DNA from: Dendrobates tinctorius
Taxonomy: Eukaryota
DNA: 64,000 bases
Assembly (NCBI RefSeq): GCF_039654945.1
Contig: NW_027361763.1
Location: 18,042,001-18,106,000, forward strand
Direction: 5' to 3'
Below, one piece after another: positions 14,499-63,135 of the stretch. The stretch's first letter is position 1; every line of letters begins with the position of its first letter. The notes beneath the pieces were generated by a model, which saw only the letters and a program-made list of their open reading frames with translations, was not told the origin of the DNA and did no database searches. Position numbers and translations under genes: made by a program.

Positions 14499-63135
<48,637 letters not shown>

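What the first reader, a model, noticed from the sequence alone, without database searches (positions are those of the whole stretch)
45759..45782. Gypsy LTR carries a 23/24 match to the satellite unit it is inserted into
Seen: the LTR has tacagtcaccaccagagggagctc (45759-45782; also 49399-49420) and the satellite has tacagtcaccactagagggagctc. This is exactly the CTCF-like core, and the element sits at the GAGCTC of that motif. Inference: the satellite may descend from an LTR-borne insulator motif, the LTR may have captured a monomer, or a chromodomain integrase may target CTCF-motif satellites while carrying its own copy. I do not recognise this retrotransposon-satellite pairing as described.
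Basis: partly seen in the sequence, partly recalled or inferred. Interest (0 to 1): 0.75.

Follow-up and report, generated by a model that had tools for sequence, protein, structure and literature searches.

The report
Frog satellite related to retrotransposon LTR
An old, broken jumping gene of the Ty3/gypsy type sits inside a 39-base tandem repeat, and a piece of its own terminal repeat is truly related to the repeat unit. The tandem repeat was most likely born from such a terminal repeat, which is a known way for satellites to arise.

Summary
The 24-mer lies at 45759-45782. A copy with one change lies at 49399-49422. It matches a common variant of the 39-bp satellite unit at 23/24, far beyond chance or what two independent CTCF-like sites would share.

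The carrier is a minus-strand Ty3/gypsy element with a chromodomain. It has TG..CA LTRs, a polypurine tract and decayed pol domains (RT, RNase H, integrase, chromodomain). It is inserted in the satellite with a GAGCTC target duplication.

New here: the 24-mer lies in the inner copy of a gapless 2x72-bp tandem duplication at the U3 end of the LTR. The outer copy carries the LTR terminus and still aligns with the 24-mer at 14/24 and 17/24. The motif is therefore native to the LTR and not a captured monomer or a local conversion. The homology with the satellite ends at AGCTC direct repeats 31 bp apart.

Best reading, about 0.5: the satellite descends from an LTR of this lineage. That makes it a new member of a known kind, the transposon-derived satellite.

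Satellite targeting by the integrase cannot be judged from one insertion. CTCF binding is untested.

No other copy of the LTR could be reached. Family-wide tests remain open.

Earlier notes of this scan describe similar CTCF-like satellites elsewhere in this genome.

The parts
44733..44955 (+). Satellite block S1 (5.6 units of 39-40 bp), left flank of the element
   Evidence: TRF; sequence
44950..44955 (.). Left copy of the target-site duplication GAGCTC (5 or 6 bp; the G is ambiguous)
   Evidence: GAGCTC directly outside both outer LTR ends
44956..45873 (-). LTR1, the 3' LTR (918 bp). In sense it reads TGTTGTG...CATAACA
   Evidence: 92% identical to LTR2; polypurine tract directly upstream in sense
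45730..45801 (-). 72-bp unit A of the U3 tandem duplication. It holds the 24-mer at unit positions 30-53 and AGCTC direct repeats at 45747-45751 and 45778-45782
45759..45782 (+). The 24-mer, a CTCF-like site at sense positions 92-115 of the LTR
45802..45873 (-). 72-bp unit B, paralogue of unit A, ending in the LTR terminus
   Evidence: 49/72 identity, gapless; 24-mer block 14/24
45877..45888 (-). Polypurine tract (AAGGGGGGGGGG in sense), 3 nt upstream of the 3' LTR
45866..48059 (-). Decayed 3' half of pol in several frames: RT C-terminal part, RNase H, integrase zinc finger, integrase core, SH3, chromodomain. It is cut off within RT at 48059/48060
   Evidence: Pfam; ORFs
48060..48609 (+). Later copy (98% identical) of the left flank 44446-44955: tail of the 26-bp array, unique DNA and satellite. 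It replaces the 5' half of the element
48610..49513 (-). LTR2 (904 bp), the 5' LTR by position
49399..49422 (+). The 24-mer in LTR2, with one change (GAGCCC)
49514..49681 (+). Satellite block S2 (4.3 units), starting with the right copy of GAGCTC (49514-49519)
52641..56428 (+). Main array of the 39-bp satellite, 97 units, in the same orientation
36587..36627 (-). Solitary, degenerate satellite-type unit (34/41) outside any LTR. It has CCACCAG like the LTR
   Evidence: score 47 against shuffle maximum 25

Best explanation
An old, rearranged Ty3/gypsy retrotransposon with a chromodomain lies on the minus strand. It integrated once into a pre-existing 39-bp satellite and duplicated the palindromic target GAGCTC. 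Its LTR and the satellite unit share ancestry over about 30 bp, possibly the whole unit. The shared piece is native to the LTR: it lies in the inner copy of a 2x72-bp tandem duplication at the 5' end of U3. The most likely history is that an LTR of this lineage seeded the satellite. A 31-bp piece bounded by AGCTC direct repeats was amplified in tandem by slippage or unequal exchange, and it gained an 8-9-bp internal duplication to reach 39 bp. Later copies of the family landed in the arrays, as heterochromatin-seeking chromodomain elements commonly do. Shown: the anatomy, the homology and the native status of the motif in the LTR. Inferred: the direction, the slippage step and any role of the motif as a protein-binding site.
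For: The homology is beyond chance: alignment score 44 against a shuffle maximum of 28. It is also beyond convergence of two CTCF-type sites. With the recalled matrix, two independent sites agree at all 19 matrix positions with P about 7e-6. Five further flanking bases also match, and both sequences share the non-consensus A at matrix position 15. The motif was present when the element integrated, because both LTRs carry it in identical LTR-specific flanks. The LTRs are 92% identical (K2P 0.082), while the later flank copy is 98% identical. An unbiased self-alignment of each LTR gives the 2x72-bp gapless tandem duplication as the top internal repeat: scores 27 and 31 against a null maximum of 19.5. 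The 24-mer block aligns in fixed register with the terminal unit at 14/24 (P 1e-3) and 17/24 (P 1e-5). The pattern 'unit A close to the satellite, unit B far from both' fits a satellite that split off from unit A after the A/B duplication. On the 3' side the homology ends exactly at GAGCTC. On the 5' side it can be carried back to the other AGCTC. Against natural units with ACTACCTACAG (18 of 88 units), 32 of the LTR's 36 bases then match, by my hand count. Satellites born from parts of transposons are documented (PMC7004042; frog subtelomeres PMC10794172).
Against: Only one locus, holding two related LTRs, could be examined, so family-wide presence of the motif is unknown. Homology outside the 24-30-bp core is only suggestive: p about 0.1 for unit A's 5' part and about 0.04 for unit B. 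The satellite already existed when this copy integrated, so the family must be older than the satellite, and that is not shown. A solitary satellite-type unit at 36587-36627 matches the full monomer without needing an indel, so sources other than the LTR are conceivable. No intermediate, meaning an LTR with a short array of the piece, was seen. The 53-bp identity run around the motif is not more than expected between the two LTRs (my estimate).
Confidence: 0.5

Rival explanations
1. The LTR lineage took the piece from the satellite. This could be capture of part of a monomer, or ectopic gene conversion from arrays in which ancestors of the element sat. The motif was then inherited by descendants.
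For: The element does live in the satellite, so there was opportunity. Only about 30 of 39 bp match clearly. The homology ends exactly at the GAGCTC that is also the integration point, a coincidence of roughly 1 in 39 that a junction-based event might explain.
Against: The block lies in a gapless alignment with its 72-bp paralogue and still matches it at 14/24 and 17/24. LTR-native sequence flanks it on both sides in both units. No indel or foreign block is seen. The LTR has CCACCAG where nearly all local monomers have CCACTAG. A conversion that only sharpened an older similarity is not excluded.
Confidence: 0.2
2. Both the LTR piece and the satellite descend from a third dispersed sequence, such as another mobile element or an old dispersed unit like the one at 36587-36627. 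Neither is the parent of the other.
For: The solitary unit at 36587-36627 (-) matches the satellite over 41 bp, including the half that the LTR does not clearly share. It shares CCACCAG and a preceding CC with the LTR: 23/26.
Against: That unit continues as satellite (GCTCACTGCAGACAG), so it looks like a decayed monomer and not like a source element. The LTR block has its own paralogue inside the LTR.
Confidence: 0.13
3. The similarity is convergent. Both are binding sites for the same zinc-finger protein (CTCF or similar) and look alike for that reason only.
For: With a recalled CTCF matrix both score high: LTR 19.3 bits, satellite about 18-19 bits, of 26.6. Only 9 sites at or above 12 bits lie outside the arrays in 64 kb.
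Against: Two independent sites agree at all 19 matrix positions with P about 7e-6. With five more flanking bases and one mismatch allowed, I estimate about 1e-7. They share a non-consensus A. The match extends into ATTA..TACAG outside the core.
Confidence: 0.07
4. The integrase is guided to this satellite, for example by a protein bound to the CTCF-like site, and cuts at the GAGCTC edge. This does not exclude any of the other readings.
For: The insertion is at the 3' edge of the motif, at a perfect 6-bp palindrome. The element has a chromodomain. Earlier unchecked notes report satellite-specific LINEs in this genome.
Against: There is one insertion event only. Satellites are a common resting place for chromodomain elements without any sequence specificity. 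A Tc1 transposon and other repeats lie nearby.
Confidence: 0.1

Closest known systems
Satellites born from tandem repeats inside LTR retrotransposons (for example plant Ty3/gypsy elements; PMC7004042, review PMC12628747)
   Same: A short piece of a Ty3/gypsy element is homologous to a satellite monomer. The piece lies in a region of the element that already carries a tandem duplication.
   Different: Here the piece is in U3 of the LTR of a vertebrate chromodomain element. No element copy with a short intermediate array was seen. The direction is inferred from one locus.
Transposon-derived subtelomeric minisatellites of frogs (Xenopus tropicalis; PMC10794172)
   Same: This is a frog genome rich in mini- and microsatellites, where arrays derive from portions of transposons. 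Ty3 elements and satellites are enriched together there.
   Different: That paper names SINE/tRNA-V, CR1 and Kolobok as sources. An LTR source and a CTCF-like unit are not mentioned in the passages I read.
Transposon-borne CTCF sites (for example rodent SINE B2 waves) and the Su(Hw) insulator of Drosophila gypsy
   Same: A mobile element carries a motif like an architectural-protein site, and the motif becomes multiplied in the genome.
   Different: This comparison rests on my own knowledge and was not tested here. Multiplication here would be by tandem amplification and not by transposition. Binding is unknown.
Chromoviruses (Ty3/gypsy elements with a chromodomain at the integrase C-terminus)
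   Same: The domain order is RT, RNase H, integrase, SH3, chromodomain. The element has TG..CA LTRs and a polypurine tract, and it lies in repetitive DNA.
   Different: The copy is broken: gag, protease, the RT N-terminal part and the primer-binding site are missing. The best protein relatives are only 58-73% identical.

Membership tests
Ty3/gypsy LTR retrotransposon with chromodomain (chromovirus) | pol domain order RT, RNase H, integrase, with a chromodomain at the C-terminal end | tested here: met
   Pfam hits on minus-strand ORFs in that order: RVT_1 and RT_RNaseH_2 (47392-48114), Integrase_H2C2 (46857-47474), rve (46628-46867), SH3_Tf2-1 and Chromo (45866-46297)
Ty3/gypsy LTR retrotransposon with chromodomain (chromovirus) | Direct LTRs with TG..CA ends, a polypurine tract before the 3' LTR, and a target-site duplication | tested here: met
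   LTRs at 44956-45873 and 48610-49513 are 92% identical. The tract AAGGGGGGGGGG is at 45877-45888. GAGCTC lies on both outer sides
Ty3/gypsy LTR retrotransposon with chromodomain (chromovirus) | Primer-binding site, gag and protease | tested here: not met
   They are absent from this copy. The region between RT and the 5' LTR is replaced by a 550-bp copy of the left flank (48060-48609). This is a deletion in this copy and says nothing against the family
Transposon-derived satellite | Monomer homologous to a defined piece of the element, beyond chance | tested here: met
   28/30 with one 2-nt gap; score 44 against shuffle maximum 28. The full-unit alignment is only suggestive
Transposon-derived satellite | The piece is native to the element and not acquired from the satellite | tested here: met
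   It lies in unit A of a 2x72-bp duplication and aligns with unit B at 14/24 and 17/24 in fixed register. This is shown for this element's two LTRs only
Transposon-derived satellite | Intermediates (element copies with short arrays of the piece), and an element family older or more widespread than the satellite | not testable with these tools
Collection scans gave 0 hits
CTCF binding site | Match to the CTCF core motif | tested here: inconclusive
There is a non-consensus A at one strong position, and no frog-specific matrix was available
CTCF binding site | Occupancy by CTCF | not testable with these tools
   No binding data were at hand
Site-specific (satellite-targeting) retrotransposon | Independent insertions at the same position of the same repeat | not testable with these tools
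   The window holds one insertion event. The second junction at 48609/48610 is a copy of the first (98% flank identity)

The most novel reading that the evidence does not exclude
The element family both founded a satellite of CTCF-like sites from its own U3 repeat and is steered back to it. A protein bound to the motif would tether the integrase so that it cuts at the GAGCTC edge. This would resemble Tf1 and Sap1 in fission yeast (my recollection, not tested here). The result would be a self-reinforcing pair of retrotransposon and satellite that spreads architectural-protein sites through frog genomes.
Probability: 0.07. Interest if true: 0.8.

Novelty: new member of a known kind. Interest (0 to 1): 0.42.

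Why it matters
If the direction holds, this is a vertebrate case in which a long array of co-oriented sites resembling those of a genome-folding protein traces back to a retrotransposon's regulatory repeat. About 100 such sites lie in this window, and earlier unchecked notes report similar CTCF-like arrays elsewhere in this genome and one that is common in related genomes. The case links two known routes: transposons as carriers of such sites, and transposons as seeds of satellites. It gives a concrete, testable pair of sequences. It is not a new principle, and neither binding nor the family-wide picture has been shown.

Tried and rejected
- **Collection scans.** Exact-pattern scans for the degenerate 24-mer and for LTR-specific strings found nothing in viral contigs or metagenome contigs. 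These collections are not expected to hold frog DNA, so the blanks mean little.
- **Copies within the window.** Self-BLAST of the element against the window found only the two LTRs.
- **Earlier findings.** A look-up by sequence was blank.
- **Literature.** A search for the sequence strings found no paper.
- **Local gene conversion from the flanking satellite into this copy: rejected.** Both LTRs, which diverged well before the flank copy arose, share the motif with LTR-specific flanks and the C variant.
- **Special conservation of the motif block between the two LTRs: rejected.** A 53-bp identity run is about what 8% divergence gives.
- **The CTCF 'upstream module' (TGCAGT-like) as explanation for the TACAGT flank: set aside.** The spacing to the core is wrong. 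This rests on my recollection of the bipartite motif.

Full report
**1. The observation**

The 24-mer is at 45759-45782 on the + strand, exactly as written. It recurs at 49399-49422 with one change, GAGCCC. The 39-bp satellite forms four blocks in one orientation:
- 44733-44955
- 48347-48609
- 49514-49681
- 52641-56428, the main array of 97 units

The unit variant TACAGTCACCACTAGAGGGAGCTC, which gives 23/24, occurs 9 times. The majority units have C at the sixth base and A or G at one position, giving 22-23/24.

Local alignment of the whole LTR against a satellite trimer scores 44. Composition-preserving shuffles average 17.4 (sd 2.4, maximum 28). The alignment extends the match to 28 of 30 columns, with one 2-nt gap. 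Nothing else in the LTR resembles the satellite.

**2. What carries the motif**

Minus-strand ORFs between 45866 and 48114 match these Pfam families, in this order along the minus strand:
- RVT_1 (C-terminal part only) and RT_RNaseH_2
- Integrase_H2C2
- rve
- SH3_Tf2-1
- Chromo

The reading frame is broken several times.

Directly downstream in sense lies the tract AAGGGGGGGGGG (45877-45888). After three more bases comes a 918-bp repeat (44956-45873) that reads TGTTGTG...CATAACA in sense. A 904-bp copy lies at 48610-49513.

The outer sides of the pair both carry GAGCTC. Removing the element and one GAGCTC restores an intact monomer in phase. So this is one integration of a chromodomain Ty3/gypsy element into an existing array. 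The target duplication is 5-6 bp and forms a perfect palindrome.

The best protein relatives of the chromodomain piece are 58% identical (unnamed, from ENA assemblies). Over the chromodomain alone, relatives from the poison frog Ranitomeya imitator are 68-73% identical. Earlier notes of the scan call this a poison-frog genome.

**3. A later rearrangement**

pol stops within RT at 48059/48060. Next comes a 550-bp copy of the element's own left flank: the tail of the 26-bp array, unique DNA and satellite. This copy abuts LTR2 at the same nucleotide as in LTR1. The flank copy is 98.2% identical to its source, whereas the two LTRs are 92.3% identical (K2P 0.082).

The LTRs therefore diverged long before the flank was copied, so they are the element's original pair. 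One possible cause is repair of a break inside the element, in which the LTR2 end invaded LTR1 near its left edge and copied leftwards. That is inference. What matters for the finding is that the two LTRs give two old, separately evolving witnesses of the sequence that was integrated.

**4. Is the match more than two similar protein-binding sites?**

- The LTR site scores 19.3 of 26.6 possible bits. The satellite units score about 18-19.
- Only nine sites at or above 12 bits lie outside the arrays in the 64 kb.
- Two independent draws from that matrix agree at all 19 positions with P about 7e-6.
- Five further flanking bases also agree. Allowing one mismatch, I estimate about 1e-7.
- Both sequences share an A at a position where the matrix strongly prefers C.

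Convergence alone does not explain the match.

**5. The motif is native to the LTR**

An unbiased self-alignment of each LTR, with the diagonal excluded, gives the same top internal repeat in both. It is a gapless, head-to-tail 2x72-bp duplication at the + strand right end, which is the 5' end of U3 in sense.
- Scores are 27 (LTR1) and 31 (LTR2). Shuffles average 13.3 with a maximum of 19.5.
- Unit B (45802-45873) ends in the LTR terminus.
- Unit A (45730-45801) holds the 24-mer at unit positions 30-53.
- Identity between A and B is 49/72 in LTR1 and 51/72 in LTR2.
- In the register fixed by the flanks, the 24-mer block matches unit B at 14/24 (P 1e-3) in LTR1 and at 17/24 (P 1e-5) in LTR2.
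- There is no third unit upstream (19/72).

A captured monomer, or a local conversion tract, would appear as an indel or an unrelated block. Instead the block has a decayed paralogue of its own.

**6. Limits of the homology**

On the 3' side the homology stops exactly after GAGCTC. The LTR goes on with GGGAAG and the satellite with ACTACA.

On the 5' side there are two possible alignments. One is ATTA--TACAG. The other runs back to a second AGCTC at 45747-45751, 31 bp before the first, and treats the satellite's ATTATACAG as an 8-9-bp internal duplication. Under the second alignment, 32 of the LTR's 36 bases match natural units with ACTACCTACAG. That count is mine, made by hand. Such units make up 18 of 88 counted.

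This second alignment is only suggestive. The 5' part alone gave p about 0.1. The matching part of unit B, which reads CACTACC like the satellite where unit A reads CATTACC, gave p about 0.04.

If the second alignment holds, the piece is bounded in the LTR by short direct repeats. That is the kind of arrangement from which slippage or unequal exchange can start a tandem array.

**7. A third relative**

At 36587-36627 on the minus strand, outside any LTR or array, lies a solitary unit that matches the satellite at 34/41. It scores 47, against a shuffle maximum of 25. It continues as satellite after GCTC, so it is of satellite type and not LTR type. It has CCACCAG, like the LTR and unlike nearly all array units.

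This fits an older satellite state with C at that base. It also keeps open a source other than the LTR.

**8. Reading**

- Homology is real, about 0.9.
- The pattern 'unit A nearly equal to the satellite, unit B far from both' is most simply explained if the satellite split off from a unit-A-type piece after the A/B duplication. I put this at about 0.5.
- Capture or conversion into the LTR lineage: about 0.2.
- A shared third source: about 0.13.
- Pure convergence: about 0.07.
- Targeted integration does not exclude the others. I put it at about 0.1, because one event proves nothing and chromodomain elements gather in repeats anyway.

That last point is established knowledge of the family. In Xenopus tropicalis, Ty3 elements and satellites are enriched together in subtelomeres (PMC10794172).

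One coincidence stays unexplained. The integration point is the very GAGCTC at which the LTR-satellite homology ends, roughly a 1 in 39 chance.

**9. Known or new**

Satellites that arise from tandem repeats in LTR retrotransposons are well documented in plants (PMC7004042). Frog subtelomeric minisatellites derived from SINE, CR1 and Kolobok parts are also described (PMC10794172). The strings of this satellite were not found in the paper library. I file this as a new member of a known kind.

The resemblance to CTCF sites adds interest, but it is untested.

**10. What could not be done**

- Scans of viral and metagenome contigs gave nothing.

Noticed in passing
window 44446-44955 and 48060-48609: A 510-550-bp piece of the element's left flank (tail of the 26-bp array, unique DNA, satellite) is copied into the middle of the element at 98% identity. 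It replaces gag, protease, the RT N-terminal part and the primer-binding site, and it ends exactly at the edge of LTR2. This looks like break repair that used the other LTR as entry point.
   Followed up: partly
window 36587-36627 (-): A solitary, degenerate unit of the 39-bp satellite (34/41) lies between two unrelated minisatellites. It has the CCACCAG state seen in the LTR. It could be a decayed mini-array or a single-copy relative.
   Followed up: partly
window 50440-52076: A Tc1/mariner transposon with 139-bp terminal inverted repeats (96% complementary) and a 359-aa open transposase ORF at 50780-51859. Its Pfam hits are HTH_Tnp_Tc3_2, HTH_SB and DDE_3. It is nested in other repeat DNA between two satellite blocks.
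   Followed up: partly
window 45759-45782 against 44950-44955 and 49514-49519: The integration target GAGCTC is the same hexamer at which the homology between LTR and satellite ends. It is a perfect palindrome. This is either a coincidence of about 1 in 39 or a hint of a link that I could not resolve.
   Followed up: no
window 1-64000: The window is packed with GC-rich minisatellites (periods 20-32 bp) and two arrays of an 86-bp repeat (19623-20316 and 25064-28022). Earlier unchecked notes describe an 86-bp repeat in this genome as the landing site of a Tx1-type LINE.
   Followed up: no
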